Source: Podarcis filfolensis
Taxonomy: Eukaryota
DNA: 64,000 nucleotides
Direction: 5' to 3' (one strand)
Assembly: GCA_964270895.1 (NCBI GenBank)
Contig: OZ185438.1
Positions 338 to 46,457 of the stretch are shown here, piece by piece (positions within the stretch are counted from its first letter, which is position 1; the number at the start of each line of letters is the position of its first letter). The position numbers and the translations under genes were made by a program. The notes under the pieces were generated by a model. It made no database searches. It worked only from the letters and a program-made list of their open reading frames with translations, and had not been told where the DNA came from.

Positions 338-3300
338 AGGTGGACCACGAGCTGCTCAAGAGCCTGAACGTGATTGACCTCAGCCTCAGCCAGGAGGCGC
401 TGGAGGAGCTGCTGCTGGTGGAGGTCCTGCGGGCCGAGCGGAAGGAGATCCTGAAGAACCAGCAGGCCTTGCAGTTTGGGATCCTGCAGCTGGAGGGGAA
501 GCTGGAGGCCACGGAGGTGAGGCAGGGGCTCCTGTGGCTTGGCGTGGGGAGGTGGGGCGGCCGTGGAGAGGCCGCTCAGCCCAGCCCCGTGGCCCTTCCC
601 CGCAGGAGGAGCTGGTGGCCCTGATTGCCCAGCCGCAGCGCTCTCTGCTGGAGGAGGAGAACTTCATGCCGATGGTGCGGCTGCTGCAGACGCAGATCCA
701 GGCCCTGCACGCCACCCACCAGCACATGGTCTCCCAGCACCAGGACCAGGCGGCGCTGTGCAACAAGTACCGGATGGTGCCCCGCCTGGGCGTGGCCCTG
801 CACCTGGCCCTGCAGCAGGTCTGCCGCCTCCACCCCTCCTACAGCTTCCCCAGCAGCGCCTGCATGGCCCGCGTGCGCCAGGCGCTGCTCTCCACCAAGC
901 GCCAGGAGACCACCAAGCAGGAGTCGCTGGAGTCGCGCCTCCTGGAGCTCAGCAAGGCCGTGCTCCACCACTGCCTCACCGAGGCGGTGCCCTGCCTGCG
1001 GGAGATGGACCGCCTCCTCTACCTCTTCCTGGGGGCCGTGGCCACGCTGAAGGTCTCTGGGGAGATCACCCCGCTGGAGTGGCTGGCCTTCTGCCAGGGC
1101 CTGCGGGAGTCGGCGGCCAAGGAGCTCCTGCAGCCGCCGGCCGGGGGTCCTTGCCCCAGCTGGGTGAGCGCGGAGGCCTGGGAGGAGTGCGGCTTGCTGG
1201 AGAACGTTCCTGGGTTCCAGGGGCTGCAGGCCTCCCTGGCTGGGCAGGCCACCCAGTGGCAGGAGTACTTCCGCCTGCACTCCACCATGGTGGGGCTGGC
1301 CCTGTGTCCCAGCCACACCCACCTCAGGCCTTTCCAGCGCGCCATCCTGTGGCGCATCTTGTGTCCCTCTGCCATGAGCAGCGTGGTCTCGGCCCTCACC
1401 ACCTGCTCGCTGGGCTGGTCTCTCACTGAGGAAATGGCCATCACCTACCCATACTCCTACAGCCGGGCCAACAAGCCCATCATCTTCCACACGCCCTCAG
1501 CCAGCTCTCCAGGCTGCTTCATGCACCCGCTCCTCTGGATCCAGCAGATGGCCACCCAGCGGGGACGAGGGGTGAGCCGGGGACAAGGAGGGGAAGGGGC
1601 AATGGGTGCAGGTGTCAGTTGGGTCCCTCTGGGAGGACAGAGCAAGTAACCAGGCCGCACCCCCATAGGGAAGTGTGGTAGTTATCTCCTTTGGCACCCC
1701 AGATGCCTGCAAGCGGGTTTGGCGGACGCTGCCCATCTGCAGCAAGAGAGGCAAGTGGCTGGTCTTGACCAACTGCCACCTCCAGGAGCACTGGGACCCC
1801 GACTTGCTGCAGCTGCTGGACCAGTTGGTGAAATCCTCAGGTGAGGCGGATGGAAGCAGTGGGAGGTGTCTCTCTCCCCCCAGGCCAAAGCCCCTCTCAC
1901 CTTGCCCTCTTTTTGCACAGGCAAGGTCCCAGGGGGAGGCCTCGAGATCCACACCAAGTTCCGCCTGTGGCTCATCACTGCAGCTGACGCCCCTCATTCC
2001 ATGCCAGGTACCAGGCCAGGGAGGAGGGAGGGAGGCTGATGCCGCAGGGGGGCACAGCCAGAGGGGCCCACTGCCCCCCTTTGCATCTCTCTCTCTCCCA
2101 GGGACCCGCTCCCTCTTGCTCATTGTCATCTGGGCTCTGCCACAGGGCCTTCCGCCTGCCTCTGCGGGAGAAACAGAAGCTGAGCAACTTCTGATGGCCT
2201 CGGCTGTCCTTACTGTCCCTCCCGGCCTCTGCTGTGGTGGTTGATTCTCTTCTGTGCCAACAGAACTCCTGAAGCGCAGTGCCACCTCCCTCTTCTGCGA
2301 TATGCCACTGGAGCTGAAGGGCATCCTGGCACGCAGCCACTACTGGCTGCAGGGGCGAACCCAGAACCTCGACACAGAGCAGCGGCTGCCCCTCCTCGCC
2401 CTCTACGGGGTCCTGCTCTACAGGCAGACCTATGCCCAGTGGACCCAGGCAGAGACATACCTGTGGTGAGTGAAGGAGGTGCTTGCCCTGTCCAGCAGCG
2501 AGGCAAAGGGCCTGCCAGTACATCTCATGGGAGCTTGGAAACTCCTCCTCTGCTTTATGCTACTTGGAAAGCACCCTGAATCGCCACCTGTGGGCTCCCC
2601 ATTCTTCCCCTGCTCTTGGAGCTGCCTGTGTGGGCTAACAAACCAGTCCTTGCCCACAGGGTTGCCACAGAGGGGGCTGCTGGCTGCAAGGGGGGGGGGG
2701 AGCAGAGTGGGAAGCAGCAGCAGCAGCAGCGGATGAGGGCTTGGATCTCCCAGCTGACAGGCAGCCAGGGAAAGGCTGAGGGCTTTCTCCCTGCAGCCCT
2801 TTCTGGCAGCAGCAGGAGGAAGACCCCTTACCTGTGCCTCACAGAATTCGACAGGGCTCCCCTGAGCAGGTGAACTGGAGGGTACCCGGGACGCACCCAT
2901 GGAAGCTGCCAAGTAGGATGAACCTAAGGAGTCCTGCAGCAGCCGGATCAGGCCAGAGGGGCTCCATCTAGTCAGCCTTCTGTTCTCACAGTGACCAACC
3001 AAGAAGGTCCTGAGCAGGAAGGGACCCCATGAGCTCATTCTTGCATTGGCCACAGCAGTCCAGACCCCACTTGTTGGGGGTTTCTTTTGCCCCAAAGTAC
3101 ATCACTTTTCCTTGAGCTGTATTGCATTTGCAATAAAAAGCAAGATGAGCGCCACAACCCCAGAGTTGTCCGCAACTGGACCTAATGGTAAGGGGTCCCT
3201 TTACCTTTACCTTTCATCACTTTTCCTTGCCTTGAATTGCATTTGCCATTTTGATAGCCCCTTTGGAGTTCCTCATAATCCCGCTGGAGTTTAATCACCC

Positions 3301-6300
3301 TGAACAATTTCGTATCAACAGCAAACCTGGGAACCTTACTGCTCACACAACCCTCACAAAAAAAGTTAAAAAGCACAGGTCCCAGCATCAGTCCTGCACA
3401 GCACAGAGGGTGTAAGAGCTGCCGCCTGGATCAGGCCATCTAGCCCAGCCTCCGGTTCCCACGTGGCCAACCAGAGGCACAACAGGAGCCCCAGAGCCCT
3501 CTCCCTTCCCGCGGTTTCTAGCAGCTCCCCCAATGGTGGAGGAAGAGGATTGCCATTGTGGCTCCTCTTTAGAGATGGTGGCTGCCATTGCCTCCTGCGA
3601 GAGCCATCGTCTGGCTCTGTGCTGCAGGAAGAACTTTCTTCCATCTGCCCTTCTGACATTCAGCTTCATTGGACATCTATGCGTTTGAGGGTTACGAGAG
3701 AGGGAGAAAGTTTTCCCCTTTCCACTTACCATGTGCCATGTTGCCCCTCACTTTTTGAACTAAAAAGTCCCAAATGCTGTCTCCTTTCCTTGTAAGGGAG
3801 TCGCTCCACCCCCTTAGGGAGCCCCTCCTGAATCTTTTCCAACTCTGCAATAACCTTTTTGAGGGGAGAGGAGGTGCCCAGAACTGTATATCGTTCTTCA
3901 AATGTGGGCACACACCAGATTCCTGAAACGGCATGATGATACTGGCAGTTTTATTCTCAATTCCTTTCCTACTGATCCCTCGCATGCAAATTTCCTTTTT
4001 CATGGCTGCCACACTGGAATACTTTGTACACCCCACAATTGGGAGAACCACCATTTATTCTTACTTCCTGTTTCTTAACCTGTTTCCCACTGATCCCAAA
4101 ATGAAGTTTACCCAAGAATCTTTCATAGAACCAGAATTGTAGGGGCACCCCAAGGGTCCTTTAGTCCAAGCTCCTGCAATGCAGGAATCACAGCTAAAGA
4201 CTCCTGCTTAAAATCCTTCAGTGAAGGAGAGGCCCGTCCCCTGCCCAGGTCTTCTGTTCCACTGTCCAAGGGCTCTTCCTCTCAGCTGCTGGGACCCTAA
4301 GAAAGTTGAGAGCAGCCCCCCCCCCCCCGGGCCAAGACGGTCCTCACTCTGGCATGCCAGGAGTGCGGTTTTTGCTCTGACCCTGCCCTGTGCCTGAGAT
4401 TGTGCTGCCCTTGCAGGAGCCACGGGGAAGTGTTGGCCGGGCTCAGAATCCAGGAGAGGCTGAACTGCCTAACAGAGGGAGCCCAGGAAGCCCTGCAGGA
4501 GCTGGCCGGTATGGACACAGGGCTGAGTGAGGGGTTCAAGGGGACAGCCTGCAAGAGCCAAGGCCTTGAAGGCCCCCTCCGAAACACGGCTGGCTCTTGT
4601 GCCTCTGCAGGGACCATGCTCTACGGGGGCCACATCCTGGACAGCGGTGATGCCCAAGTGGTGCAGAGCCTGTGCCAGGCCTGCTTGGCTCCTGCCTCCC
4701 CCCTGCAGCCAGCCTCCAGCCTCCAGCAGCTTGTGGCCAAAGTCGTCGGCTGCCCCAACCCAGGTGAGAGAAGATCAGACGAGCCGGCTGGGTCCGGCCC
4801 AGCATCCTGTTCTCACTGCGGGAAACCCGCAAGCAGGACTCAAGCCCAAGAGCAACACCCTCCCCGCCTGCGGTTTCCGGCAAGGGGTATTTGGAAGCCT
4901 TGCTTCCTCCAGCTGTGACCATTGTGGGTGGCCATTGTGGGGCCCTTCATGAATTGGCTAATGTCTTTGAAGAGGGCAGGGAAGAGCCTGCCGGTGGGGG
5001 CGCTGGGTGCTCTGCTGATCCCCCTCCCTTTCCTTGCACCCTGTAGGGAACACGGATGAGGAGGCGGCCGCCGCCACCCAGGCCGGCTTCGAGCAGCTGC
5101 CCAGCCCTATGGAGCCTGCCAGGATCGGCCTGTGCAGCGCGCTGCAGCAGCGGATGCTGGCGGAGCGGAGCCAGGCCTTGCTGGTGGCCTTGCAGGCCTC
5201 CCAGGGCCTGTGGCAGCCCTGCCGGGCCCCCTGCCGCCCGCACACAGGTGCCCTGGAGCAGCTGCTGCGGGACGGGATCCGGCTGGTGCAGGATCTGCAG
5301 GAGCAGCTGAGCGAGTGCGGCTGGGAGGTGGGCTGGAAGGGGTGCCCCCCGCAAGGGCAAGCCCGCCCCCGGCCGCGCCCCCTGCAGCGCTTCCTGCTTG
5401 AGGAGGCGGGCATCCTCCTGGCCCTGCTGAAGCAGGTGGGCCGCGACCTGAGCTGCGCCCAGGAGTGCCTGCAGAGGGAGCCCTGCTCCTCCCGCCGCTG
5501 CAGCACCATCCTCTACCACCTGAAGCAGGGCCGCCTGCCCAGCCCCTGGCTGCCCTACGCCCTCACCGGCCCCCAGGCCCCCCCGGCCTGGCTGCAGACG
5601 CTCAAGCAGCGGACCCAGCTCCTGTGCAGCTACCTGGGCTCCATCAGCGGGCCGCTCGTGGCCCACTACCAGCTGGCTGCCTTCCACCAGCCCCGCCGCC
5701 TCCTCCTGGCCGTGCTGCAAGAGAGGGCTCGCGTGGAGAGGCAGGAGCTGCACCGCTACCAGCTGCACCAACAGGTAGGGAGGGGAGGCCGGGCATGGGG
5801 GTGGGCACAGGGGCAAGCCCAGCAGCCCCGGTCCCTGAGCGCCCCCTTTCCCCCTCCCTCTTGCCTTCCTTTGCCAGGTCCTTCCCAGTGGGCCACCCCC
5901 CACCAGCGCCCCCGAGAAAGGCATCTATCTGAGCGGGCTGGAGCTGCGCCATGCCTTTTGGAAGGCCCACAGTGGGCTGCTGCAGGAGAGCCGCACGGCC
6001 GAGCCCTGCCCGCTGCCCACCATCTGGATCCAGGCCGCCCGCCTGACCTGGGACATGGCCTCTGCTGGCACCACCCCCAAGCTCCCAGCCAACAAGTTCC
6101 TGTGCCCCGTCTACCTGGGGGTCCCCGAGGTCCCTGTGGCGCTGGGCAGCCAGCACGTCACCCTGCACCTGAGCCTGCCTTCCAAGATGGCCCCTGAGCT
6201 GTGCCTCCAGCAGCGTGTCCACGCCGTCAGCCTCCTGCACTGGGAGGGGGACAGCAGCACAGGGCAAAGGCAGCACCCTGCCCCCTCCCCCAGAGCCCCC

Positions 6301-6544: not shown

Positions 6545-9500
6545 TCATTTCAGGTCCACGTCAAAATCCAAAACAAGCAGCTTGGTCTCCTCGGTCCCGT
6601 TGCGGCTCCCCACGGCGCACACCAGCTTTGTGTTGGAGGCCCGGATGCGCCAGACCACCCCCCCGCTGCCGCCACTCTCCAGCGCCACCAGGTTGCGCAC
6701 AAACTCGCCCGTCTTGAGGTCCCACAGCTTGACGGTGCCGTCGTCTGAGCTGGTCACCACAAACTTGGAGCTGAACTGGAGGCAGGTGACGGCACTCTGG
6801 TGCTTGCTGGGACCTGCAGAAGGGGGGGCAAAGAAGGTGAGAAGCAGAGATCAGCTGCCATGCCCAGCCACAAGTGCCCAGCCGCCTCTTCCTGGAGGAC
6901 ACCCCTGGTGGCAGGCCTCTGCCCAGAGGGAGAAAAGCCTTCCCCTCCCCAGGACTTTGTGAGGGCCGATGGGGAGTTTCAGGTCCCTGCAGCCCAGCCA
7001 GCTGCCCGCAGCACCCACCTTGCAAGGTCTGCAGACACTGGCCCGTCTTGATGTCCCAGATCTTGACCGTGGAGTCGGCGTTGCCAGAGACCAGGATGTT
7101 GTCGCGCAGCTCCATGCCGCTGGTCAGGGACTGGTGCCCCATCAACGTGTGCAGGCAGTTGCCGCTCTCGGCGTCCCACACGCGGATCGAGGTGTCCAGG
7201 GAGCCACTCACAATGTGGGTCCCATCAAACTGCGCAAGAGAGGGGTGGGAGGAGTGAGGGGCTGTGCGACTCAGGGGATGGGGAGGGAAGGGGTCGGGGT
7301 CCCTCACCTGCAGGGAGTAGACGCGATTGGTGTGGCCTTGCAAGGTGTGGATGCAGCTCTCCGTCTCGGGGTCCCAGACCTTGACCGTGTAGTCGTAGGC
7401 GCCACTCACCACCTTGTGCCCGTCGTACTGGACGCAGCGGACGGCGGCCACATGGCCCATCAGCACGTGCAGGCACTGTCCTGTCTCGATGTCCCAGAGG
7501 CGGAGGGTGGCGTCCCGGGACCCACTCACCACCCTGCCAAGGGAGGAGAGACAAGCAGCTTGAGTCCCAGGCAGGAGGGGCAGGAGGGGTCCCTGGAGCG
7601 ACTTCCCCCCTCCAACCTACCTGCTGCCGTGGAGGTGCATGCAGCGCACGGTGGAGGTGTGCCCGTAGAGGGTGTGCACGCACTCGCCCGTGTCCGCGTT
7701 CCACACCTTGAGGGTGCGGTCTGTTGAGCCGCTGATGACGATGTTGTCCCTCATCTGGGAAGACCAAACGCCCCCCGTGTGCCCCACCAGGGTCTGAACG
7801 CACTGCGGGAGGAGGAGGAAGATGCTCAGAGCCAGGAAGGCGGAGCCACAGCCACCCCCGCCCACAGCACCATTTCCCAGACTCACCTCCCCGGTGACAG
7901 CCGACCACACCTTGAGCGTGTTGTCATCTGAGCCGCTCACAATGCGGTTGCCGCAAAACTGGAGGCAGGTGATGACATGGTCATCGTGGCCCTTCAGAAC
8001 CTGGTCCAGGGAGAGAATTAGCAAGCCAGCCGGCATCACCCTGCACCCCCTTTCTGCGGTTGAGGGAAGGGGCAGCTTCCTCCCCAAGCCCAGGGGCCTT
8101 GAGTTCTCCAAGGCTTGAGACCAGGCCCAGCGGTCAGGAGCTGGCATCAAGCAGGCGGACTTCAAATTCAGCAAGGGCTGGAGGTTCAGCCCCAGTGACA
8201 GCCCCAATTCAAGGAGCAACCAAGTCTCCCCCCCCCCATCCTGCATTTGTGAATAGCCAGAATTATTCTACCTTCTGGATCTCCTTTGCCAGAAGTCAAA
8301 GGTGCTTGCCTGGTCCACCTAGCTCAGCAGCAGCAGCAGCGGCTCACAAGAGTTTGGGGCACATGTCTGTCCCAGCCCACCACTGAGCCCTGGCCCCTGC
8401 CTGGTATAGGACAGGGACTGGGACCCAGCTGGGCACCCAGGCATTGGGTTGCTCTTCCTCCAGAGCCTGCTCTTTGGTCCCCATCGTGCAGCCACCCCGG
8501 AGATCCCAGAGTAGTGTCTTAGCCCATGACCAGGTTCGTAAACCCCGCAGCACGTCACCCCAATGGCGGGGGTCAAGGGTGGTACCTTGGGGGGGCGGGC
8601 ATCCCCGCCACGCCAGTTCATGTCGATTCGGTGCTGCCGCAGGAAGGCCAGTTTCCAGGGGCTGTACATGAAGCCTGGGCTGAGCAGCCGGCGCTTGCGC
8701 AGACTCAGGGGCTCCTCGATACCTGCAGGAGGCAGAAGCGGCTGTGACAGGGAGGAGGCCCAAGGGCAGCCGGGAAGCAACACCGAGCAGGAGCTGAGCC
8801 TCACCTGCATCGCGGCACTTCTCCCGCCACAACAGGTTGTCCTCGGCCAAAATCCGCCAGTAGCGACAGGTCTGCGCCGCCCGGAGCAGGTCCCGTGGCT
8901 CCAGGAACGAGAGCACATAGAGCGCCAACTGCAAAAGGGACAAGATTTCCTCCCATGAAAGGCCTCCCTGGGTGCAAATGGCAAGCCAGGCACGGAGAGC
9001 ATGGGGCTGGGCTGGGCAGCTTCTCGTGTCCACAACAGCAATGTGAAGACTTTGCCATCTAGATGACCTTTCACCCTCACCAGCCGAACATCTGAAGCAG
9101 CCGTCCAATGCTCCTCCAAGAAAAGAGCTGGATCAGAGCCAGGCCTTGGGCAAAGGCCTTTTGGAAAGCCCGTGGTCCACACCTTCCTCCCCCACAGCAG
9201 CTGTCAGGGCCACTGTGGCCACGCAATCCCAAACTGCTTCACAGCCCACAAGGCCTCTCCTGCCTTTCCAATCCAGCACAGAGTCTGCGGCTGAGCTCCC
9301 TGTCCTGACCATCTGGGCCAATCTCTTGCCCTCCAAGCATCCTCCTGCCATTTCTTATTGTCCTCGTTGCCACTCCTGTCTGAGTTGGCTTTCTTTGGAT
9401 GTGTTACAGAGGGCTCCCTATGACACAACTTTTGCTCTAAAAATGGTAGCCTGCACCTCACAAGGGAAGTTCTGCTTTGGCCTGGAGAGGCAGGGAGAGA

Positions 9501-12500
9501 GCGTGCGTTACATTAGCTCACGTACGCGGACGTTCAAGCGAGCTAAATCCATTGACCGCTGTCTCTTCTCTCCCTTGACATCTTTGACAGCCTCCCCTTA
9601 ATGTTTGTATATTTAAAAATTAAGAAAAAGGAGCTTTTGACTGAAAGTGTTCAGCCCATCTGCCACTTATGACAACACCATTAAAAACCATTTAACAATC
9701 ACTTTCAAAAAACCAAGATTTTGTACTCTGCATCTGTTTACATTTTAAAGCCTAATTTGAGCATAAAGCCCAACTTTTGCCTTAGCACCCAGAAATCTTT
9801 TGGATCCCAGAGGCCCTGCCCAATTACCACACACCCACTTTTTCCTCTTCTCCATCACTTTCTGCTGCACATTGAGCAGCTGCCTTGGAGAGACAAGGCC
9901 TGGCACACCCGCCTCTTGTTCTTGGCCAAGCTCTTCTACCCTCCCTCTCTGGGGCTGCTTCGTTCTTCCTCCCTCTTGCAAGGCCCTCTGCTGCTGCTCC
10001 TTCCCTTGCCTGTCTCATTTCTTTTTCTCCTCTTTGGCAGGAACTGAACTCTGGCTCTTAGCTTCTCACCAGGCCTTCAGGTTCTCCGATAACTTTGATT
10101 CTTGCCGTTAAAAGTTTTCCAAGGCCTTGTAATCAAATCAAATAGCTCCTTCTCTGATGTGTCTCATCTCCTGCTAAAGCAACTGGCTCTACTCAATTTT
10201 CCTGCTGGTGCCACATTTGCACTTCAGATAAAGTTCTCTTTTTCCAGTTTCTTTCTGTTACTTCATTCTAGTGTTTCTGTGAGTTTTCATGCACACTTTA
10301 AAAATGTGTAGCTGGTATGAATAGTTCTGACTCTTATTTGTTTTTGACACAGGTAGGTAGCCGTGTTGGTCTGACGCAGTCAAAATTTTAAAAAAAAATG
10401 TCCAATACCGCCTTATAGACCAACTAAGTTTGTTCTGGTATAAGCTTTTGTGTGCATGCACACTTCTTCACTTCTTTTACAACTACCTATCGTGTCCCCT
10501 TGTCACCCCTCTTGACTTTGGCTCAGATTCTGATCTCCTGCCCTGTTGCTAAAGGCTTTCTAACAACACCCTGCAGGCTCATTCTTCCACCAACACCTTC
10601 AGCCAACAACTCCCCACTGTCCTCTCTCGGCTGCCCTGCATTCTTCCTCCAAGGTCCCCCACCCACAAGACACTCACCTCTTTGGGCAGCAGTGATATGA
10701 AATCGCGCTGGAATTGGGGCTCGATCACTTGCATCATGTGCTTGATCTGAGGAGGCTCACAGCGGTCAATGAGCTCATCCAGAGCCAGCAGCTTCTCTGG
10801 GCCGCTCCAGCGCTGGCGGGAGAAAGGAGTAAGGGGAGATCAAGCGCAAAACCCAGGATTGCAGCCCGTCTCTGCGCCAGAACCAAGGCCACAAAGCAGC
10901 CCATAAAAGCAATCAAAGCAAAAGCTTTGTAGCTTTCTAAATGTTGAAACACCACCAATGCATCAGCTCACTTTTAAGATCAAATCCCTAAAACAAAATA
11001 GGAAATGAGAAACACACCACAGCACATCTGCCAAATGCCCGGCTCGTGGAAAAAGGCCTTTGCTGAATGTCGGAAGGTCAGCTGCAAGCCAGCCAGAAAG
11101 CGCAGCCCTGCTCTGCCTCCAGCCGAGGGCCTCATGCATCACACAGACACAGGCGCCTCTGCCTGCCACTCACCTGGAAAGTGCGCAGCCAGTCCTGCAG
11201 CTCAGGGGGTGGTGTCATTGGGGGGACATGCCGGCAGCGCGCCTGGCCTGCCTTGGCGTTTCGCAAATCCCCAAAGGTGGCCGTGGGGCTAGCGACACAG
11301 GGGCCCAGCACTCTGGAGAGGAAGCAAGTATGTCAGGAGAATGCCATGGCCAGGGGCCCAAGTCAAGAGTCCTGCTGGAGACAGACCCCCTGTCTCCCCC
11401 GGCACCTTGCAGGAGCTCCCAAGCGCCACCCGCAACCTTCTCACCTGCCCCTCTCGGAGCCCTTGCACAGCTTCTTGCCAGGCGACTGGGCTCTGCCATC
11501 CGGGCCGCTCTCTGACTTGCGCTTCATCTGCAATGCAAAGAGATGGGGCGGAATGGAGTCACACGGATCCAGGAAAACCTTCAGCTCCACAAGAAGAAAG
11601 GCTATGCAATGCACGCAGTGCCCCCTCCTGATGAACAGCGCCGCATCAGGTCAAGTGGGGCACCCTTCTTGCTGCCTCCACCGCACAGCAGCCATGCCAG
11701 GGCCCCCATGCCTCCCCAAAAGACTGGAAGGCTGAACACTTTCTCTCAGAACACAGATCTACAAACTGTGCTTTGGGACAACAACCTCGTACGGACAGGA
11801 GGTGGGGAATAAAGATGCAGCACGCAGTAGCCCTCTCCCCACCTGACGGCTTTTGCCTTTCATCCTTGGAGCCTTGATGGCCAGAACACACCCAAGAATC
11901 ACAAGAGCCTGCTGGATGAGGCCAATGGCCCATCAAGTAAAGGTAAAGGACCCCAGTTTAAGTCCAGTCAAAGGTGACGATGGGGTGCCGTGCTCATCTC
12001 GCTTCACCCTGAGGGAGCCGGTGTTTGTCCGCAGACAGTTTTTCCAGGTCATGTGGCCAGCAGGACTAAACCGCTTCTGGCACAACTGAACACAGTGACG
12101 GAAATCAGAGCGCACGGAAATGCCATTTACCTTCCTGTCACAGAAGTACCAATTTATGTACTTGCACTGGCATGCTCTCAAACTGCTAAGTTGGCAGAAT
12201 CTGGGACAAAGCAACAGAAGCTCACCCCATTGTGCAGATTCAAAAAGGGATGTGAATGGGAGTGTGGTCTAAACCACACTGACCCTCTTGGGCTTGCTGA
12301 TCAGAAGGCCCGTCCAGTCCAGCCCTCTGTCCCCACAGTGGCCAACCAGATGCCCATTATGGAAACCCCCAGGCACAATCTGTGCCCAAGAACAACACTC
12401 CCCCCACCCCTGGTCATCTGTGGCTTCCAGCATCTGGTTTTCAGAGGCATCGCTGCCTCCTACTGTGCAGGGCAGAGCATGCTTAGCCATGGTGGCTAGT

Positions 12501-13806
12501 TGCCTCCAACAGCCCCTCCTCTATGAATTGCAGACTTAAAATCTGCACAGGAAAAATGTGCTCCGACTTCAAAAATTCCTCCAGTGAGGGGGAAAAAAAG
12601 ATATCATGAACAAGGCATTAAATTTATGCGCTCCAACCCCCTTGTTATGGTCAGCACAGTCCCTTGGCTGCACCCCTGAGAAACGCTTAGCACAAGCATT
12701 TGATGCCACAGACATTTCCAGGAAGAACCTGAAGGTCCTGGCCAGCATCACCCTCTTCTCCTGCCAGCCGCCCTGAGCCAAAGAGAAGACCAAACCGAAA
12801 ACTTGCACAGCCCCCCCCCCCCTCTGATGCCTGGCATGGACACTCTCGGCTGCTGCGCCCCAGAGCCCCGTCCCTTTCTCTGGGCTCCTTTCCCCAGGCA
12901 GCTTCCCAAGGAGAAGCGTCTGCTGGATCTGGCCCATCCCGGGCAGCCGCCTGCTCTGCCGGGGGTCTCCCTCTTCCCGTTCTCCCCCCCGCAGCCCCTT
13001 CTTCACCTTGGGCCGCGTGTGCCGGATGAGGCCGCCGCCCTCCGTCCGCTCCAGGTAGTCGATCCAGCGCTCGTCCACCGTGTAGTAGAAGTAGACGTCG
13101 CCGCCGCCGCCGCCGCTCTCCTCGCCATCGCTGCTGCCGCCGCTCGTCTCATCCTCGGAGTCGGGAGCCCCCGGCGGGCAGGAGCTGCCCGGCTCCTCCT
13201 CCGGCTCCGCCTCGGCCGCCAAGCAGGCCGGCGCCCAGCTCTCCCGCTGACCCGCCGCCTCGTCCGGAGCCTGCGGGGGGAAGCGGGCCGCGGGGTTCAG
13301 CGAGCCTCGGCCCAGCCGCCCGCCCCCCGCCCGGCTTTCTTCCGCCCGCCCCCCGCCCGCCCCGGGGACGCGGGCCAGGGTCGCCGCCAAGCCCACCTCG
13401 GGCGCGGGAGCCGAGGACGACGACGACGACGCCGGGCAGGCGGCAGCGCGGGCGGGCTCCGGCGAGCAGGTCATCCGCTGGCTGTTCAGCTCCAGGATCC
13501 GCGCCGTGATCCCCTTGACGTGCAGCAGGTCGTCCAGGGAGGCGAAGCCCTTCAGCTCCTGGGGGGAGAGGGGCGCCCCGTCACGCACCGAGGGAGGAGA
13601 GGAGCCCCGCGGAAAAGCCCCCCCGCCAGGAGCGGAGCCCCCCCCCCTCGGACGCCTGGGTCCCTCACCTCCCGCTTGCGCACGATGCCCCGGGCCCGGC
13701 GGCGCCCGATGCCGACCAGCGCCCGCTCCAGCTCCGCCACGCAGGCCCGGTTGATGTCCAGCTTGCCCCCGCCGCCGGGGCCCGGCCCGCCCGCCGATCC
13801 CGACAT
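6545..13806 (-). CDS. FBXW7-like: FBXW7-like F-box/WD40 protein with N-terminal HhH domain, predicted 727 aa. Exons (transcript order) 13806-13669, 13558-13397, 13270-13007, 11527-11445, 11312-11174, 10812-10678, 8928-8805, 8722-8586, 8000-7887, 7802-7621, 7533-7308, 7229-7019, 6813-6545 (TGA)
   Basis: Exons 4-13 encode MKRK..., the D domain ([25 protein letters not shown]), the F-box ([20 protein letters not shown]) and WD40 repeats ending [13 protein letters not shown]. Exon sizes 83/139/135/124/137/114/182/226/211/269 match human FBXW7 as recalled (139 vs 142). All sites are GT-AG and the total of 2184 nt is open. Confidence refers to exons 4-13; linkage of exons 1-3 is less certain. Confidence 0.95.
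11934..12245 (-). mobile_element. Sauria-type SINE in FBXW7-like intron 3 (a short + strand 5' fragment follows at about 12262-12310)
   Basis: Characteristic segments aaaggtaaagg...ccagt, gtcatgtggccagca.gactaa.ccgcttctgg, cagagcgcacggaaa.gcc.tttaccttcc and aactgcta.gttggcag. Confidence 0.8.
13007..13806 (-). CDS. Three exons encoding a ComEA/HHH_3-like tandem helix-hairpin-helix domain plus acidic linker; predicted 5' exons of the FBXW7-like gene
   Basis: Spliced translation [32 protein letters not shown]|[31 protein letters not shown] follows the ComEA pattern (ININ.A..EEL..LPGIG...A..IV..R...G.F.S.DDL..VKGIG). All junctions are phase 0, and the last donor (CCCAAG|gtgaag, 13007) is compatible with the phase-0 MKRK exon. 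Confidence 0.8.
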
Positions 13807-13938
13807 CGCTGCTGCCGCCGCCCGGACTCGGCCGGACTGCGCTTGCGCCGGCCACGCACCGCCGCCCCTCCCTCAACTACAGCCCCCAGCAGGCATTGCG
13901 AGACGAGACGAGACACTTCCGCTTCGCGAGAAAAGCGC

Positions 13939-13944
13939 TTTATT
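13939..13944 (-). terminator. RRP8 polyadenylation signal AATAAA
   Basis: tttatt on + strand, 43 bp past the RRP8 stop. Confidence 0.7.
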
Positions 13945-13987
13945 CAGAGCGAGGCGGCGGCCCAGACAAAGCCCCGCCCCCGTGGCG

Positions 13988-16900
13988 TCACCGCCGCTTG
14001 TAGAGGCAGGGGCGGAGCGCCAAGCCCGGAAGAGCCCCTTCGCCCCGCCCCTTCCGCTTCGCCGCTTCCGCCTTGCGCAGCTCGAAGGTGAAGAAGTGGC
14101 TGCCCGTCACGTCCTGCAAGGAGAGGAGAGGGAAGGCGATGCGGAGGCGCGCGCGGGCCGGAAGGGGGCCTGGCGCGGCCCCCGGGAGGGAGGGAACCCC
14201 CCAGCCGAGCGGGAGGAGACCTACCTTGCGGAGGAGCCGGAAGCCGAGCCGGGCCAGCGCCGCCACGAAGGCCCGCACGTCCGGGAAGCGGCTGGCCACC
14301 TCGGCCACCAGGAGGGTCCCCCTGCGAGGAGAGGCGGAGGGAGGGAGATCAGCCACCAAGGGCGGCGGGGGCAGAAAAGACTAACGGGGATGCTGAGTGA
14401 ATCCTCCAGCCGGCAGAAGCATCCCCTGAGCAGGACACCCCCCCCGTGTGTGTCAGGAGGGCAGCTGCAGGACCCGGGAGGGGCTGGGAGACGGCCTGGC
14501 CCCCCAAAGAGAGGGGCCCCAACTGCTATAGGTCATTGTTTTTGCTGGTGCTCTGAGTGGTTACCAATCATGCAATCCTTTCCCCCTAAGCAGTCCAGGG
14601 AATGCTTGCTTATTTTATTATTGCATTTCACATCAGGAAACCTCAGAGGATGCCTCAGAAGCAGCCCCTTCCCACCTTCGGAAATTTAAAATGTCTGTTT
14701 TACAGTATTTCATGTCCTGTAACCCACCCAGAGTGGCTGGGGAAACCCAGCCAGATGGGCGGGATACAAGCAATAAAATTATTATTATTATTACTATTAT
14801 TATTCACAATGATCCAGAGCTGCTGCCTCTGATCCTGTGGCCGACATGTAGCCACTGACAGCCTTCCTTCTCTCTCCAGCAATTCAGACCCAGGGGTCCT
14901 TCTCTGAGCTCTGCCTGGAGCTGCCATGGGTGGGTGTGAGAGGGTGAACCCAAGACCTGCCTGGGAAGTCTGCACTTCCACCAAAGCTCTTCCTCCTCCT
15001 CGCTACTTGTTTTCAAAGGCAATTGATGCAGAGGGCTGATTTTAAAGAATGCAAGTAAACTTTAGATCAGGGGGGCTTCATGCATATTTTCGAGACTGTT
15101 TTGATACTGAAATAGAAAATACACGAATAGTGGTTTTTTCAATATTCAAGTTAGTGCTACTAAGCAGATTTAGCTGATTCACTGCCTCAAGGCTCTTTGC
15201 AACCATCATTAATTCATTGTCTGAATATTAATAAATGTATATTAACATAATCCTTTATTTTAGTAATATCTTTTGTTTAAGTTGTTGTTATTTCAGTTTT
15301 CTGTACAACGCTTAAAAATATTCTAACTATATCTCTATTAATATATTAGTAATATTTTAATATTTCTGACTGGAAAACCCAGTCAGATGGGCAGAGTATT
15401 ATTATCATTATTATTATTAAGCAGTATAGGTATTAAATATCATCATCCCCATATGACAGCCATAGGTTTTGACTGAGCTGGCAGTGCCCTGATCAGCCAC
15501 TTCACGTGTCCCCCTCACTGCCACAGCCCCTCCCATGCCAGTGAGCCCAGGACCCCACAATTACCCAACTCGTAGCACACGGTTGGCCTCTTCCAAGATC
15601 TCCTGCAGGTTAGTACCCATCAGTGCCAGGCAGAACACAGCCACGTCAACAGATTCATCATCCAGGGGGACCTGCACAGAAGGAGCAAAAAGGGAGGCGC
15701 AGTTGGAAAACCATGTGTGTCAGGTAGTCATAGAAGCATAGAACTGTGGAGCTGGGAGGGACACCCAAGGGCCATCTAGTCTAATCCCCTGGAATGTAGG
15801 AATCACACTCAATGTATCCCTGACACGTGGCTGTCCAAGCTCTGCTTAAAAGCCTCCAGTGAAGCAAAGCCCACCTGCATGGGCTGATCACACAGCAGTG
15901 CCCAAGCCTGGAGAAGGCAGGTGCTGTGAGAAGGCCCTCCCCCCAACGTACCTGGGCCATGTCGCAGACAATGACTCGGGGGTCCAGAGCCACCAGGTCA
16001 AAACAGTGCACTTTGTTCCGCACGCTGCGTGCCAGCATGCAGTCCCCGCAACCGAAATCTGCCACCACAAGTGATGCTGGTCTGTGGGGGGAGGGGCAAA
16101 GTTAGACCGTGCACCCATCCTGTCAAACACTTCTATACGTTAACTATGACATTGCAACATGCGCAAATGTTTGCTTAACCAGCACATGTTGAAGGGGGGG
16201 AGCTGGCCAACCCCCCCCCCCATCCTTACCTCTGGCGCAGGTAGCACACAAAGCGCTGCACGGGGTTTTCAGGCCACTGGGCCACCTGCCGGGCAAAGCC
16301 CCGGTGATACACTGCCAAGGCCTCAGGGTCATCCTGGAAGAGCTGGACTGCCTGCTGGCTGGAGGATGTGTAGAGCTGCTGGTTGATGAAGCGGAAGCGC
16401 GCTGACTCCAGCCGCTCCTCCATGCGCAGCCGCAGGGATGCTGCCCTCTCGCTGAGAAGTTCCTGGCCTGCTGGATCTTCCTGGCTGCTGGGGGGCTCCT
16501 CTGCTGCTGCAGGGACTGCAGAGGCCACAGGGGGCTTCTCGCGGCCCAGCCCTGCCTTGAACCTGTTCTGGCGACGCTTGTTCTTCTGGCGGTTCTTCCA
16601 CTGTCTCCTGGTCAGCCGCTGCCTTGGCTCCTCCTCTGGGTCCTTTGCCCCAGCGCTCCTCTGCTTGCTGCTGGGCTCAGGGTCTCCGCCTCCAGCTGCC
16701 TTGTCTGGACAGGGCAAGGACAGAGGTGCTTAGCTCTGGGCTCCATCGCCCCCCCCCCTGCCGGCCCAGATGATCGCTCTAGTCCGGGGCTCTGTGCACT
16801 GACTGCTGGTGGCAACAGCCCACCGGGGTTCCAGGCAGAGGGACCAGCCCCACCCCACCTGGAGAGGCCCCCAGGGACTGAGATGCAGGGAAGGCTTCAC

Positions 16901-23388: not shown

Positions 23389-23743
23389 GGGGAGGGGGAC
23401 GTGCTCTGCAGCCCCCCCCAGCCTGCCCACAAGTGCCTTGGGGAGGCGCTGCTGACAGGAAGCGCCACTTCCTTGCTCTTGAAACAAAACGGTACAGAAG
23501 GAGCCCCCGCCTTGCCCCCTCCCCTTTCGGGGCAGCTCTATTGGGGGGGGGGTCCCTGCTGTAAGCTGCCCTGGCCTTTTAAGCTCCCCCAGCAATGCTG
23601 CGCTGCCTTCCACAGTGCCTAGCACCCCGTCCCCTCAGCGCGCATCAGCAAGGTCGCCTCGCACTCGGAGCCCACCGCCTGCCTCTGCGCTGCACGGTTT
23701 TTATCTTTTCTATGCAGGCCCCGGCCCAAGCCAGAGGGCTCAA

Positions 23744-41696: not shown

Positions 41697-44600
41697 CTAG
41701 ATGCGGAGCTCGGCCTCCTCCGAGGCCTCCAGGGAATGCTCGGTGCTGATGGCGGACGCCGAGGGCCCCTGGGAGACCCCGAAGGGAGAGACCATGGGGG
41801 AGCGCGCGGCCAGTGGGGAGAGCGAGGGGGAGAAGCTGGGGGACATGGCGGCCGAGGAGAGGGAGCCCTCGTGGCTGATGGGGGAGCGTCGCAGAGAGGA
41901 GGAGGAGGCGGTGGCCAGGTGGGGGAAGGCCCGCCCCACGGCCGGCTTGGGGGGCACGGACTTGGCGCCCGGGTGCGCCACGGAGGTGATGAGTGGAGGT
42001 GGGTCGATGCGGGGCTTGGGCTTGGTGGGGAAGGGCTTGCGCAGGGAACTCTCGTCCTTCAGGCGGGCGATTTCTGTGAAGACGCTGGCCAGGGGCTGGA
42101 ACTGGGGGCACCAGTTGAGGAGGTAGTCCCAGTTGTAGCTGCCGCGAAGCTCCTCATCACTGGCCACAATGGCCGTCAGGGAGCCGTCCACGCACGGCTT
42201 CCCGTCCTCCGGAAAAGAGTAGTCTTTGGGGGCGGAGGAGACGCTGAGCCCACAGCCGGCCCCCAGGTAGGGGCCGCTGCTGCCCCCGTCATCCCGGTAG
42301 AGCTGGGGGGGCTGGCCGGGAAGCAGCAGGCCACCAGGCCCCTTCCGGTTCTTGAACCAGTGAGCCGCATCCAGGGTGGCGGGCTCGCAGGAGACGTCCG
42401 AGAGGCGGTCCGCGTCCGTCTGGATGCCGGAGTCGGGTCCGCGAGCCACCAGGTGCTCCTGCAGGGAGGAGGTGACGCTGGACATGCGGGGACACTCATT
42501 GATCATGCGGATTTCGTCGTCCTCGGCCGCCTCGGCGGAACCTCGCCCGCTGGAGTGGGAAGGGTCCAGAGACCCACCCCGGGTGTAGGGGCCGGCCGGT
42601 TCCGTGCCATAGCCGGGCAGCGCCTCGTGGTAGAGGCAGTCTCCGCCTGGCAGAGTCGGCTCGCCGTGGCCCAGCTTCTGCAAGGAGCCACTCTGCACAT
42701 GGGCCAGATCCACCTCCTTGGGGCCCCGGCTCTGCCGCGAGCGGACCAGGGCCAGCACAATGGCCACGGTGGCCAGCACCACCACCACGCCCAGAGAGGC
42801 AGCTACGGCAACCACCAGCAGCAGGTTGAGGTCAGGCACCAGGCCGAAGGAGGTGTGCGTCACGTCCACGGTGACCTGGGCGGAGGCCGAGCGCGAGGCG
42901 GGCAAGGGGCTGTGGGCCTGCACCTCCAGCACCATTTCCCGGGGCTCTTGCTTGGGAGGCCCCCCCGAGGGCGCCTGGCTGTCCACGCGCAGGTAGATGG
43001 CGCCACTGGTTTGGTTGATTCCGAAGAAGGGAGACGGCTTGAGCAGCGTGTAGAGCACCACACCGTCAGGGCCCTCGTCCTCGTCCGTGGCCACCACGGA
43101 CCCAATGCTCTGCCCCCGCTGGGCACCCTCGGGGACCTCGAAGCTGAAGGCTGGGCTGAGGAACACGGGGTCATACTCGTCCTCCCCGGTCACCAGAACA
43201 CGTACGGTGGCTGTGGCCGATGTGTTGCCAACATCCGTGGCCTGCACCCGCAGCTGGACGGCCTTTGTGCGCTCAAAGTCAAAGGGCTGCAGCGCATGCA
43301 GCTCCCCGGAGCTGCTGTTGATGGCGAAGGCCTCCCCGCCCTCAGATGGCAGGAGGGCATAGCGCAACTGCCCAAAGGCTCCCACGTCCAGGTCCACGGC
43401 CCGCACCGTGGTGACCAGGCTCCCTGGCGGCAGGTTCTCCCGCAGGCTGCAGCTCAGCACCTCCAGGGGGAAGTAGGGGAGGTTGTCATTGACGTCCTTC
43501 ACCTCCACGGTGATGGACGCTAGGGCAAAGTGGCCGCCTGCTCCGTCCGAGGCCCGCACCACCAGGGTGTGCAGGGCCTGGGCCTCGCAGTCCAGCGCCT
43601 TTGCCAGGCGCAGTGCCCCTGTGGACGGGTGCAGCTGGAAGAGCCCGCCGGGGTCCCCGGAGCTGATGCTGTAGCGGACCTGGCCGTGGGCCCCCGAGTC
43701 AGGGTCCTGGGCTGCCACGCGCAGCAGCTCTGCCCCGGGCACGGTGCCCTCACTCACGGCCACGTGGTAGGCAGAGCGTCCAAACACCGGGGGGTTGTCG
43801 TTGACGTCCAGCACAGTGAGCAGCACAGGCACCACGGCGCTGTGCTGAGGCACTCCCCGGTCTGACACGGCCACCGTCAGGTTGTAGATGGCCACGGCCT
43901 CAAAGTCGAGGGGCTCCACCAGCACCAGGGCACTGGCGCCCCCGGAACGGCCCTCCAGCTGGAAGGCGTGGCCGCTGTTCCCGCTGACAATGGTGTAGTC
44001 GAGCGCCGCGTTCTCCCGTGTCACGTCGGCATCTGTGGCTTCCAGGGTGAGCAGGGTGGTCCCCGGGTGCAGGTCCTCCGACACGCAGGCGTTGTAGTGC
44101 GGCTTCAGGAACTGAGGCCCGTGGTCGTTCACGTCCAGCACTTGGATCTGCACCGTGGTCCAGGCCGAAAGGCTGGGCGTGCCCCGGTCGCGGGCCTCCA
44201 CTAGGATGTCCAGTGTGGAGCGCCCCGGATCCAGCACCAGGAGCTGCGTGGTGAACAAGGTCCCTGGGAGGGCAGAGAAAGGGCAGTGAGGAGGAATAGG
44301 AGGAGAAAGAGAAGAGGAGGAGGAGGAGGATGGAGAGAAAGAGGAGGGAGAACATCACAGAGGACAAAGAAGAGGAGAAGGAAGAGCTCAGCCAAAGTCC
44401 CGTCCCCCCCAGAATTGCCCCTGCCCCTCCAACGCATCTCACAGGGGCCTCCTCCCACGGCTGCCTTCATACCGTTGGTCCGGTGGATGGAGACCAAGTG
44501 GCTTGGCCTGGCCAGCTGGTAGGTGACCTCCCCGTTGGCGCCCGAGTCCAGGTCTGTGGCGCTGAGGGTCAGGATGGGGCTGCCGGCTCGGGTGTGTTCT

Positions 44601-46407
44601 GGCAGTACAACCTGGGAGGACACAGAGGGTTACCTGCCATTCCTGGGCATCTATTTGCCCTCCAAGGTTGTGGGGGAAACCTGTTGGCATGAGCTGCCCC
44701 CTACCCATGGGTGCCCCTGTGAGGAGCCAAAGGGGGAGAAGAGCAGAATGAGGGCAATGAGGAGGGGGTCCGGGGGGGAGGCGTGGTCTCTCCGGCACGT
44801 GACTGAGCCATGTTGAGCTGAAGGGGGCAACTCACACCGGGACACTTTTTCGTATTTGGCACAAGTGATGCTTAAACTAAAGCAGCAACATAGCAATTTG
44901 CATCGAGGTTTGTGATCGAAGGTGCCGTCGCTGCCCTGCCCTCTGAATCCTAGCTCTGGGCCACTTTTCTGCACTTTCCCACGGCTGCAGAGCTCCCCTA
45001 CGCAGATCATTTTGTGGGTTCTGCCCTGCCTGGCGAAGGACGTGCGGCCCCTGAGGGGAGAAGCCTGAGGGAAAGGCTGCGCACCTGATACAGGGCCTGG
45101 GAGAAGACGGGAGGGTTGTCGTTGACGTCTTCCACCAGCACCGTGACATTGGCCTCCGTCTCGTGCTGAGAGTCCGAGGCGCGCACCGTCAGTGCATAGC
45201 GGCTGCGCTGCTCATAGTCCAGCGGCCCCAGCAGAGTGATGCGGCCCCCGTAGCGCAGGATGCTGAAGGTGCCAGCACTGCCACTGTCCAACACCAGCAT
45301 GTAGGAGAGCTGCGGCCCGCAGTCCACGTCGTTGCCCGTCACCATGGTGATCTCGGTGCCCAGCAGGGCGTCTGTGGAGTGGGGGGGAGGGGGTCAGAGC
45401 TGGGCCTGCCAGGGGCAAAGGCCACGCAGAGCTGTTTGGGGTTGCCCAGGGGAGCATGGCTTCTCCTCCCCATCTCGATGGAGGGCTCTGTGCCAGCACT
45501 AAGAGAAAGAAGCTCTGCATTTGCTCAGAGGTGCTCATGTCTTCAGGTTTTGCAAGTGTTTCCCAGGTGACACCCTCCGTGCCTGCTTTTGAGGGGAGCC
45601 GTGCTGAGAGAGCCCCGCTTTCCCACAGCGCCCCTCCCCCCAGCCAACCAAGGGGGGCTTCATGAGCCCTGTTCCATCTACTCACTCTCAGGCACCCGCA
45701 CCTCCCAGGGGGCAGGGATGGTGGGGCTGTTGTCGTTCACATCCATCACCAGCACTGTGAGGGTGGCAGAGCCCACCAGAGGAGGGTTCCCTCGGTCTGT
45801 TGCGGTCAGCACCAGGCTGTGGGTGGAGGGAAGCAGGAGCGTCTCAGGGACAAGGGGGCGCAGCTGGCGTCTGCCTGGGGAATGGGGGTCAGGGCCAAGG
45901 AGAAGCCCGCCTGGTGCCACAGGGTGCCCCTTCCCCTTTGGCAGCCTCCAGGAGGCCCCCACAGGCACCCCTGCTATTCCAGGGAGCGCATGGCGGGGGC
46001 AGAAGAGGGAACTGGCCTGGCCCAGTCACAGACCTACCTTTTTGGGGCCTGGAGCTTGAAATGTCACGGGGCCCCTTGGCCACCAGCAACGAGGTCTGGG
46101 CGAGCCCCGTTCTCTTCTTCAGTGACGGAACTGACACCTTTACAACATCTGTGCTACTGACTCTCGGACTTTGGTATTGTTGAAATATATACAACTTAGA
46201 CTCAAATCAATGCAGCTCAGATTGGGTCTACTAGACCCACAATTTTTAAACAACGTGGACTAAAGTTGCTTCTGGGTCCCTCTGGGATTCAGGGCCTGAA
46301 GCCGAAGCTTCATTAGTCTCACAGTAGATCTGTCCCTGCCCATCCCCCCATCCCCCCATCCCTGCCCTTTCTGTGGGAAACCCAGCCAGGTGGGCGGGGT
46401 ACAAATA

Positions 46408-46457
<50 letters not shown>

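What the first reader, a model, noticed from the sequence alone, without database searches (positions are those of the whole stretch)
6545..11527. Intact second FBXW7 gene, likely the ohnologue from the DCHS1/DCHS2 paralogon
Seen: ten exons with FBXW7 exon sizes and no disabling lesions, so not a retrocopy or pseudogene. The phosphodegron-binding arginines are kept (TSTVRCM, SGSRDAT, AAVRCVQ = human R465/R479/R505; also STDRTLK and WRIRA). The usually conserved MKRKLDHGSEVRSF region is diverged ([14 protein letters not shown]). Known: human FBXW7 lies at 4q31.3 near DCHS2, TRIM2, ARFIP1 and FHIP1A, whose paralogues DCHS1, TRIM3, ARFIP2 and FHIP1B lie at 11p15.4. Inference: this is the whole-genome-duplication sister of the FBXW7 tumour suppressor, probably still able to bind MYC/cyclin E/NOTCH-type degrons.
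Basis: partly seen in the sequence, partly recalled or inferred. Interest (0 to 1): 0.8.

Follow-up and report, generated by a model that had tools for sequence, protein, structure and literature searches.

The report
Second FBXW7 gene in a lizard
This lizard carries an intact, strongly conserved second copy of the tumour-suppressor gene FBXW7, an ancient duplicate found from sharks to birds and monotremes and not found in placental or marsupial mammals, known so far only from automatic database names.

Summary
On the minus strand, ten exons (11527-6545) with canonical splice sites encode a 539-aa protein with a dimerisation region, an F-box and eight WD40 repeats. It is identical to the RefSeq "FBXW7-like" protein of lacertid lizards. 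All residues that contact the phosphodegron are kept (R441, S462, T463, R465, R479, R505, Y519, R689).

The gene is longer than reported. Three upstream exons (13806-13007) add a helix-hairpin-helix and acidic N-terminus, conserved from sharks to birds.

A maximum-likelihood tree places it in a clade (100/99) of cartilaginous fishes, lungfish, coelacanth, salamanders, caecilians, monotremes, turtles, birds and squamates. That clade is separate from the canonical FBXW7 clade (98/96). A squamate-only duplication is rejected (AU p = 3e-67).

Lacertids also have the canonical FBXW7 on another chromosome, with the same intron positions. The neighbours here are DNHD1, RRP8, ILK, TAF10, TPP1 and DCHS1, and in a bird TRIM3. 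dN/dS against Varanus is 0.03.

No therian, frog or ray-finned-fish member was found, and no paper describes the gene. The ohnologue reading is supported, though whole-genome and block duplication cannot be told apart here.

The same scan had already noted the upstream exons and the promoter region on this window.

The parts
13669..13806 (-). Coding exon a. It holds the start codon (13806-13804) and the first half of the helix-hairpin-helix domain.
   Evidence: 138 nt, phase 0, GT donor. HHH_3 partial hit. Aligns to the N-termini of annotated FBXW7-like proteins from sharks to birds.
13397..13558 (-). Coding exon b: the second half of the HhH domain plus a Ser/Ala-rich linker.
   Evidence: 162 nt, phase 0, AG/GT. 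Exons a+b joined, as in Podarcis isoform X2, score 46.6 bits on Pfam HHH_3 against a cut-off of 27.
13007..13270 (-). Coding exon c: an acidic stretch followed by the conserved motif [24 protein letters not shown].
   Evidence: 264 nt, phase 0. The motif is conserved from Callorhinchus and Pristis to Grus and Chrysemys. A homologous exon is also seen in Varanus DNA.
11445..11527 (-). It encodes [27 protein letters not shown].
   Evidence: AG acceptor directly before the ATG, GT donor. In annotated full-length models it is joined in frame to exon c.
11174..11312 (-). Exon 2: the [10 protein letters not shown] region and the start of the dimerisation region.
   Evidence: Aligned to canonical FBXW7.
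10678..10812 (-). Exon 3: the dimerisation (D) domain.
   Evidence: 34 of 38 D-domain residues are identical to lacertid canonical FBXW7.
8805..8928 (-). Exon 4: the F-box.
   Evidence: Pfam F-box-like, 58.8 bits, residues 113-158 of the 539-aa protein.
8586..8722 (-). Exon 5: the linker between the F-box and the propeller.
7887..8000 (-). Exon 6: WD40 repeat 1.
7621..7802 (-). Exon 7: WD40 repeats holding R441, S462, T463 and R465. The R441 codon is at 7718-7716 and the R465 codon at 7646-7644.
7308..7533 (-). Exon 8: WD40 repeats holding R479 (7517-7515), R505 (7439-7437) and Y519 (7397-7395).
7019..7229 (-). Exon 9: WD40 repeats.
6545..6813 (-). Exon 10: the last WD40 repeats, R689 (6604-6602) and the TGA stop (6547-6545).
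13988..16729 (-). Upstream neighbour RRP8, on the same strand. Its stop is at 13990-13988 and its AATAAA at 13944-13939, only about 180 nt before the FBXW7-like ATG.
   Evidence: Sequence read. Methyltransf_8 hit on 16229-16729. tblastx to the RRP8 part of the Manacus gene model.
594..6237 (+). Downstream neighbour DNHD1 (3' part), convergent with the FBXW7-like gene.
   Evidence: Dynein_C hit. tblastx to the Varanus dynein heavy chain gene.
41700..59000 (-).
   Evidence: Multiple Cadherin and FAT4-like cadherin hits. It lies beyond ILK (18548-23417), TAF10 (about 26016-26352) and TPP1 (about 28958-29091). The name DCHS1 rests on this synteny.

Best explanation
This is the lacertid copy of a second, ancient vertebrate FBXW7 gene, which databases call 'FBXW7-like'. 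It arose by duplication of a chromosomal block before cartilaginous and bony vertebrates split, most likely in the early vertebrate whole-genome duplications.

It has been kept under strong purifying selection in cartilaginous fishes, lungfish, coelacanth, salamanders, caecilians, monotremes, turtles, crocodilians, birds and squamates. It was not found in therian mammals, frogs or ray-finned fishes.

Its product is predicted to work like FBXW7. The F-box docks it on SKP1-CUL1-RBX1, the D domain dimerises it, and the eight-bladed WD40 propeller, with an unchanged arginine pocket, binds phosphorylated Cdc4-type degrons so that the substrate is ubiquitinated.

Its main isoform carries an N-terminus that canonical vertebrate FBXW7 lacks: a ComEA-type helix-hairpin-helix domain, an acidic stretch and a conserved [13 protein letters not shown] motif.

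Shown here: the gene structure, the phylogeny, the synteny, the selection signal, the conserved residues, and a spliced transcript in a bird. Inferred: SCF assembly, degron binding, dimerisation and any DNA or chromatin role.
For: - Gene model with canonical splice sites and no lesions, identical to RefSeq P0251.
- The 13-exon model aligns end to end with Podarcis isoform X2 and other annotated proteins.
- Careful ML tree: the paralogue clade has 100/99 support and the canonical clade 98/96, each with both chondrichthyans and osteichthyans.
- The AU test rejects a squamate-only origin, p = 3e-67.
- Both genes occur in the same species.
- The nine intron positions are shared with the canonical gene.
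- Synteny is DNHD1-FBXW7L-RRP8-ILK-TAF10-TPP1-DCHS1 in the window, and collinear in Varanus and Manacus, with TRIM3 adjacent in Manacus.
- dN/dS against Varanus is 0.030 at dS 0.64, and 0.023 in the WD40 part.
- Gapless alignment to solved FBXW7 chains, E about 1e-282.
- All degron-contact residues listed in PMC10486803 and PMC8797792 are kept.
- The F-box differs from the canonical one at 2 positions and the D domain at 4 of 38.
- An intronless 2474-nt RNA-derived contig encodes the 746-aa HhH-F-box-WD40 protein in a galliform cluster.
Against: - No expression data for this species were examined.
- The ATG lies only about 180 nt downstream of the RRP8 stop, and many bird RefSeq models fuse RRP8 and this gene. 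It is therefore unclear whether it has its own promoter.
- Hagfish is unresolved in the tree, so the duplication cannot be tied to a specific round of genome duplication.
- The chromosome-4 half of the paralogon was not tested here.
- Thirty WD40 surface or core substitutions relative to the canonical protein could shift substrate choice.
- Absences in therians, frogs and ray-finned fishes rest on annotated proteins in one database.
Confidence: 0.88

Rival explanations
1. The duplicate arose by a large segmental (block) duplication in a stem gnathostome or stem vertebrate, not by whole-genome duplication. It would then be an old paralogue but not strictly an ohnologue.
For: The tree only dates the split to before the chondrichthyan-osteichthyan divergence and after the protostome outgroups. 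Hagfish is unresolved. Only a few paralogon markers (DCHS1, TRIM3) were seen directly next to this copy.
Against: Several neighbouring gene pairs are known to be split between the same two human regions: DCHS1/2, TRIM3/2, ARFIP2/1 and FHIP1B/1A (established human map, not tested here). That pattern is typical of 2R blocks. The age of the split matches 2R.
Confidence: 0.12
2. It is the only FBXW7 of this genome, moved to a new place (a translocated orthologue), or a recent squamate or sauropsid duplicate or retrocopy.
For: About 82% protein identity to canonical FBXW7. Databases sometimes name it plainly 'FBXW7'.
Against: - Lacertids have a separate canonical gene on another chromosome.
- The tree and the AU test reject a young origin.
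- All nine introns are kept.
- Members occur in sharks, lungfish and monotremes.
Confidence: 0.01
3. The gene is intact but has changed its job. The HhH N-terminus and the propeller substitutions give it substrates or a location different from FBXW7, or it acts mainly as a partner or antagonist through heterodimers with FBXW7.
For: - The HhH, acidic and YFYY motif N-terminus is conserved for more than 400 million years and is absent from the canonical vertebrate proteins listed.
- Its branches are longer than the canonical ones in tetrapods.
- There are 30 WD40 differences from the canonical protein.
- The D domain is nearly identical.
Against: Every known degron-contact residue is unchanged, and the WD40 part has dN/dS of 0.023. 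The HhH N-terminus also occurs on mollusc and annelid FBXW7, so it may be an ancestral isoform rather than a new function.
Confidence: 0.3

Closest known systems
Human/vertebrate FBXW7 (FBW7, hCDC4, SEL-10, AGO), alpha, beta and gamma isoforms
   Same: - Ten common exons with the same intron positions.
- Dimerisation domain, F-box and eight WD40 repeats.
- 82% identity over the common region, with a gapless match to the solved structures 2OVP/2OVQ/2OVR and 7T1Y.
- All phosphodegron-contact residues identical.
   Different: - A separate locus, in the 11p15.4-type neighbourhood rather than the 4q31.3-type one.
- A 7.3-kb GC-rich gene (GC3 0.85) against one of about 95 kb.
- A different conserved signature after MKRK.
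- An HhH-acidic N-terminus instead of the alpha, beta or gamma first exons.
- Faster protein evolution in tetrapods.
- Not found in therians.
Invertebrate FBXW7 orthologues with an HhH first exon (Pinctada imbricata and Dimorphilus gyrociliatus models)
   Same: An N-terminal HHH_3 domain sits directly ahead of the MKRK/D-domain/F-box/WD40 body.
   Different: These are single-copy pre-duplication genes. They lack the acidic stretch and the [13 protein letters not shown] motif seen in the vertebrate paralogue.
Teleost 'FBXW7-like' second copies
   Same: The same automatic database name, and they are also second FBXW7 genes.
   Different: In the tree they fall inside the canonical clade (98/96), not with this gene. 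They are a different duplication, and none carries HHH_3.
Xenopus 'Fbxw7-like' genes Fbxw29-33 (PMC4556705)
   Same: Described as F-box/WD40 genes related to Fbxw7 and lying outside the Fbxw7 locus.
   Different: They are reported as a Xenopus-specific expansion with only moderate similarity to Fbxw7. No frog protein appeared in the paralogue tier of the searches.
BTRC/FBXW11 (beta-TrCP1/2)
   Same: A precedent for two F-box/WD40 phosphodegron receptors kept as old vertebrate paralogues. That status is from established knowledge. Both appear as more distant structural relatives.
   Different: Both beta-TrCP copies are kept in mammals, and they recognise a different degron.

Membership tests
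FBXW7/Cdc4-type SCF substrate receptors | F-box that docks on SKP1 | tested here: met
   Pfam F-box-like, 58.8 bits (cut-off 24.3), at residues 113-158. Only K299R and Q303R differ from the canonical F-box. SKP1 binding itself was not tested.
FBXW7/Cdc4-type SCF substrate receptors | Eight-bladed WD40 propeller | tested here: met
   Gapless alignment of residues 96-539 to the 2ovp_B chain, E = 5e-282. WD40 scores 193 bits.
FBXW7/Cdc4-type SCF substrate receptors | Phosphodegron pocket residues R441, S462, T463, R465, R479, R505 and Y519, plus R689 | tested here: met
   All are present at the aligned positions. The residue list is taken from PMC10486803 and PMC8797792.
FBXW7/Cdc4-type SCF substrate receptors | Dimerisation domain ahead of the F-box | tested here: met
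   34 of 38 positions are identical to lacertid canonical FBXW7.
FBXW7/Cdc4-type SCF substrate receptors | Ubiquitin-ligase activity towards phosphorylated substrates | not testable with these tools
   This needs biochemistry.
Vertebrate 2R ohnologue pair | The duplication node lies after the invertebrate outgroups and before the gnathostome radiation | tested here: met
   Both clades hold chondrichthyans and osteichthyans, with support 100/99 and 98/96.
Vertebrate 2R ohnologue pair | The two copies lie in paired paralogous chromosome blocks | tested here: inconclusive
   This copy's side was tested: DCHS1 in the window and TRIM3 next to it in Manacus. The canonical copy's side (DCHS2, TRIM2, ARFIP1, FHIP1A) rests on the known human map. 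The 10-kb flanks of the Podarcis canonical gene showed no neighbour.
Vertebrate 2R ohnologue pair | Placement relative to cyclostomes | tested here: inconclusive
   The single hagfish sequence is unresolved between the two clades.
Processed retrocopy or pseudogene | Loss of introns, or disabling lesions, or relaxed selection | tested here: not met
   Nine introns sit at ancestral positions. The ORF is intact. dN/dS is 0.03.

The most novel reading that the evidence does not exclude
The HhH-bearing paralogue is the copy that kept an ancestral, DNA- or chromatin-tethered isoform of FBXW7, one also seen in molluscs and annelids. In non-therian vertebrates it would form homo- and heterodimers with canonical FBXW7 and so direct SCF activity to chromatin-bound MYC, NOTCH or JUN-type substrates. 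Therians, frogs and ray-finned fishes would have lost this arm independently. FBXW7 biology learned from mouse, Xenopus and zebrafish would then miss a component that is active in chicken, axolotl and reptiles.
Probability: 0.2. Interest if true: 0.7.

Novelty: new member of a known kind. Interest (0 to 1): 0.5.

Why it matters
FBXW7 is one of the most studied tumour suppressors, and it is generally treated as a single-copy vertebrate gene with three isoforms. A 2023 review read here mentions no paralogue.

A second gene with an unchanged degron pocket and dimerisation domain exists in chicken, alligator, turtles, lizards, snakes, salamanders, lungfish and sharks. Knock-outs or mutations of FBXW7 in those animals may therefore be buffered or modified by it.

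The commonly used mouse, frog and zebrafish models appear to lack it, which may explain why it has gone unnoticed.

It is also a clean case of an ohnologue lost on the way to therian mammals. The monotreme copy evolves fast (stem branch 0.32 against 0.01-0.06 elsewhere).

Automatic names are inconsistent: 'FBXW7', 'FBXW7-like' and 'RRP8 isoform X'. These invite mis-assignment of orthology.

Tried and rejected
- The look-up of encoding contigs found no record for P0002, P0031 or P0264. Monotreme and Podarcis loci for the paralogue could therefore not be read, and Varanus and Manacus were used instead.
- The first exon coordinates were off by 1-4 nt and gave frameshifts. They were corrected.
- The first Varanus CDS started at an upstream ATG of a GenBank model and inflated dN. 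It was corrected.
- An unfiltered tblastx was swamped by GC-rich low-complexity hits and was repeated with filters.
- Literature searches found no description of this paralogue. The terms tried were FBXW7 + ohnolog, 'FBXW7-like', 'lost in mammals', 'repeat-containing protein 7-like', FBXW7 + helix-hairpin-helix, and TRIM2/TRIM3/ARFIP1/ARFIP2.
- The Xenopus 'Fbxw7-like' genes of PMC4556705 and the teleost 'FBXW7-like' copies were considered as the same gene and rejected.
- No structure prediction was run, because the protein aligns without gaps to solved FBXW7 structures.


Full report
**The sequence.** The window is GC-rich vertebrate DNA. On the minus strand between 11527 and 6545, ten open segments are bounded by AG acceptors and GT donors. 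Joined together they give a 1620-nt ORF with no stop or frameshift and a GC3 of 0.85.

The 539-aa product is exactly P0251. RefSeq lists that protein as 'F-box/WD repeat-containing protein 7-like' for Lacerta agilis, under XP_033001567.1, with three further accessions attached to the same sequence. The common region is also 100% identical to a Podarcis muralis protein.

**The gene is longer than reported.** The ATG at 11527 follows a phase-0 acceptor (ttgcag|ATG). Upstream lie three further exons, each a multiple of three in length:
- a, 13806-13669
- b, 13558-13397
- c, 13270-13007

They encode 188 residues: a helix-hairpin-helix domain, a Ser/Ala-rich and acidic stretch, and the motif [30 protein letters not shown].

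The resulting 727-aa model aligns from first to last residue with annotated proteins of Podarcis (isoform X2: 4 mismatches plus short indels), Sceloporus, Ahaetulla and others. The three parts are conserved in turtle, crane, newt, caecilian, lungfish, sawfish and elephant shark. Joined exons a+b score 46.6 bits on Pfam HHH_3 against a cut-off of 27.

This part had been noted earlier in the scan (s1-302342). I checked it independently through homology and the domain search.

**Family membership.** The protein has an F-box (58.8 bits) and WD40 repeats (193 bits). Residues 96-539 align without a gap to the crystallised human FBXW7 chain 2ovp_B, and residues 95-539 to 7t1y_B, at E about 1e-282.

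That alignment gives an offset of +168 to human numbering. The residues that contact the diphosphorylated degron are Y519, R505, R479, R465, T463, S462 and R441, with R689 added for low-affinity degrons (PMC10486803 and PMC8797792). All are present.

Against the lacertid canonical FBXW7 the differences by region are:

| Region | Differences |
|---|---|
| WD40 part | 30 of 334, none at the contact residues |
| F-box plus linker | 24 of 93, two of them in the F-box proper |
| Dimerisation domain | 4 of 38 |
| N-terminal common region | 40 of 74 |

**Phylogeny.** A search with the WD40 part, and then with the Varanus protein, returned two tiers of vertebrate proteins.

A careful IQ-TREE analysis (LG+C20+F+G4, 44 rows, 549 columns) recovers two clades:
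- Paralogue clade, support 100/99: Callorhinchus, Scyliorhinus, Pristis, Narcine, Protopterus, Latimeria, Lissotriton, Geotrypetes, platypus, echidna, Chrysemys, Grus, Varanus, Crotalus, Podarcis and the window.
- Canonical clade, support 98/96: sharks, gar, teleosts, lungfish, frogs, caecilian, turtle, alligator, emu, echidna, armadillo and lacertids.

Hagfish is unresolved and protostomes lie outside both. Forcing all squamate sequences into one clade is rejected (delta lnL 230, AU p = 3e-67).

Podarcis, echidna, Chrysemys, Protopterus and Pristis each contribute one protein to each clade. Cluster listings add chicken, ostrich, penguin, alligator, many turtles, geckos, skinks, snakes, Ambystoma and Pleurodeles to the paralogue.

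A search seeded with the echidna paralogue found no therian, anuran or ray-finned-fish protein above the canonical plateau. The teleost '-like' copies fall inside the canonical clade.

**Two genes in lacertids.** The canonical FBXW7 of Podarcis spans 92-97 kb on an 81-84 Mb chromosome record in two assemblies. The paralogue's records are 107-108 Mb. tblastn of the canonical protein on its locus shows ten common exons whose nine boundaries coincide, codon for codon, with those of the window gene. The copy was therefore made at the DNA level, not by retroposition.

**Synteny.** The gene order in the window is:

| Gene | Coordinates | Strand |
|---|---|---|
| DNHD1 3' part | 594-6237 | + |
| The paralogue | 6545-13806 | - |
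| RRP8 | 13988-16729 or beyond | - |
| ILK | 18548-23417 | + |
| TAF10 | about 26.0-26.4 kb | |
| TPP1 | about 29 kb | |
| DCHS1-type cadherin gene | 41.7-59 kb | - |

Varanus shows TAF10-ILK-paralogue-DNHD1. Manacus shows TPP1-TAF10-ILK-RRP8/paralogue-(small ORF)-NHL-repeat gene, the last read as TRIM3. This is the human 11p15.4-type neighbourhood.

FBXW7 itself lies near DCHS2, TRIM2, ARFIP1 and FHIP1A on human 4q. That comes from the established map and was not tested here.

**Selection and expression.** Against the Varanus orthologue, whose CDS was rebuilt from L002 and checked to translate to P0121, Nei-Gojobori dN/dS is 0.030 at dS 0.64. By region it is 0.065 in the N-terminal common part, 0.022 in the D-domain/F-box part and 0.023 in the WD40 part.

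An intronless 2474-nt contig assembled from run SRR27537577 encodes a 746-aa HhH-F-box-WD40 protein that clusters with the chicken proteins. It is a spliced mRNA. No expression data for the window's own species were available.

**Mechanism.**
- Shown: an intact, selected gene with every sequence feature that defines an FBXW7-type receptor.
- Inferred: it joins SKP1-CUL1-RBX1 through the F-box, dimerises through the D domain (possibly with canonical FBXW7 as well), and binds Cdc4-type phosphodegrons in the unchanged arginine pocket, leading to ubiquitination.

The HhH N-terminus may add DNA or chromatin contact. The same kind of N-terminus occurs on FBXW7 models of a bivalve and an annelid. None of the canonical vertebrate proteins listed carries it. 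The paralogue may therefore have kept an ancestral isoform.

**Novelty.** The gene is present in RefSeq and Ensembl under inconsistent automatic names. I found no paper that describes it. A 2023 FBXW7 review does not use the word paralog.

The held library lacks most subscription journals, so prior description cannot be excluded. I rate it a new, unstudied member of a known family. It is moderately surprising for a gene as heavily studied as FBXW7, and relevant for work in chicken, axolotl and reptiles.

Noticed in passing
window 13806-13990: The RRP8 stop codon (13990-13988) and its AATAAA (13944-13939) lie only about 180 and 130 nt upstream of the FBXW7-like start codon on the same strand. 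Many bird and turtle RefSeq models are named 'RRP8 isoform X' and fuse the methyltransferase with the F-box/WD40 body. This suggests read-through transcripts or annotation chimeras.
   Followed up: partly
window 50626-51558 (+): A 311-aa open frame with Tc5-transposase HTH and CENP-B N-terminal DNA-binding domains (a pogo/Tigger-like element) sits inside the DCHS1-type gene region, on the opposite strand.
   Followed up: no
L002 8385-10000 (Varanus komodoensis contig SJPD01000204.1): Between ILK exon 1 and the MKRK exon there are only about 1.6 kb, holding a match to exon c. RRP8 and exons a and b are not seen. This could be an assembly collapse of a GC-rich stretch or a real difference. The Varanus RefSeq models accordingly lack the HhH N-terminus.
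   Followed up: no
tree (P0030, P0031): The monotreme paralogue has a long stem branch (0.32 substitutions per site, against 0.01-0.06 for other tetrapod paralogues). The echidna isoform with HhH lacks exon c. This may reflect relaxed or changed constraint in the mammalian lineage before the loss in therians.
   Followed up: no
window 14700-15460 (minus-strand reading, RRP8 intron): Two copies of a short interspersed repeat with an (AAT)n tract followed by 'cccgcccatctg(g/a)ctgggttt(c/t)cc', typical of squamate SINE-like elements.
   Followed up: no
P0171 (Acipenser sinensis, flagged UNVERIFIED_CONTAM): A sturgeon record scores in the paralogue tier by bits but has only 60-65% identity and falls in the canonical clade in the tree. 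It is probably a chimeric or contaminated model.
   Followed up: partly
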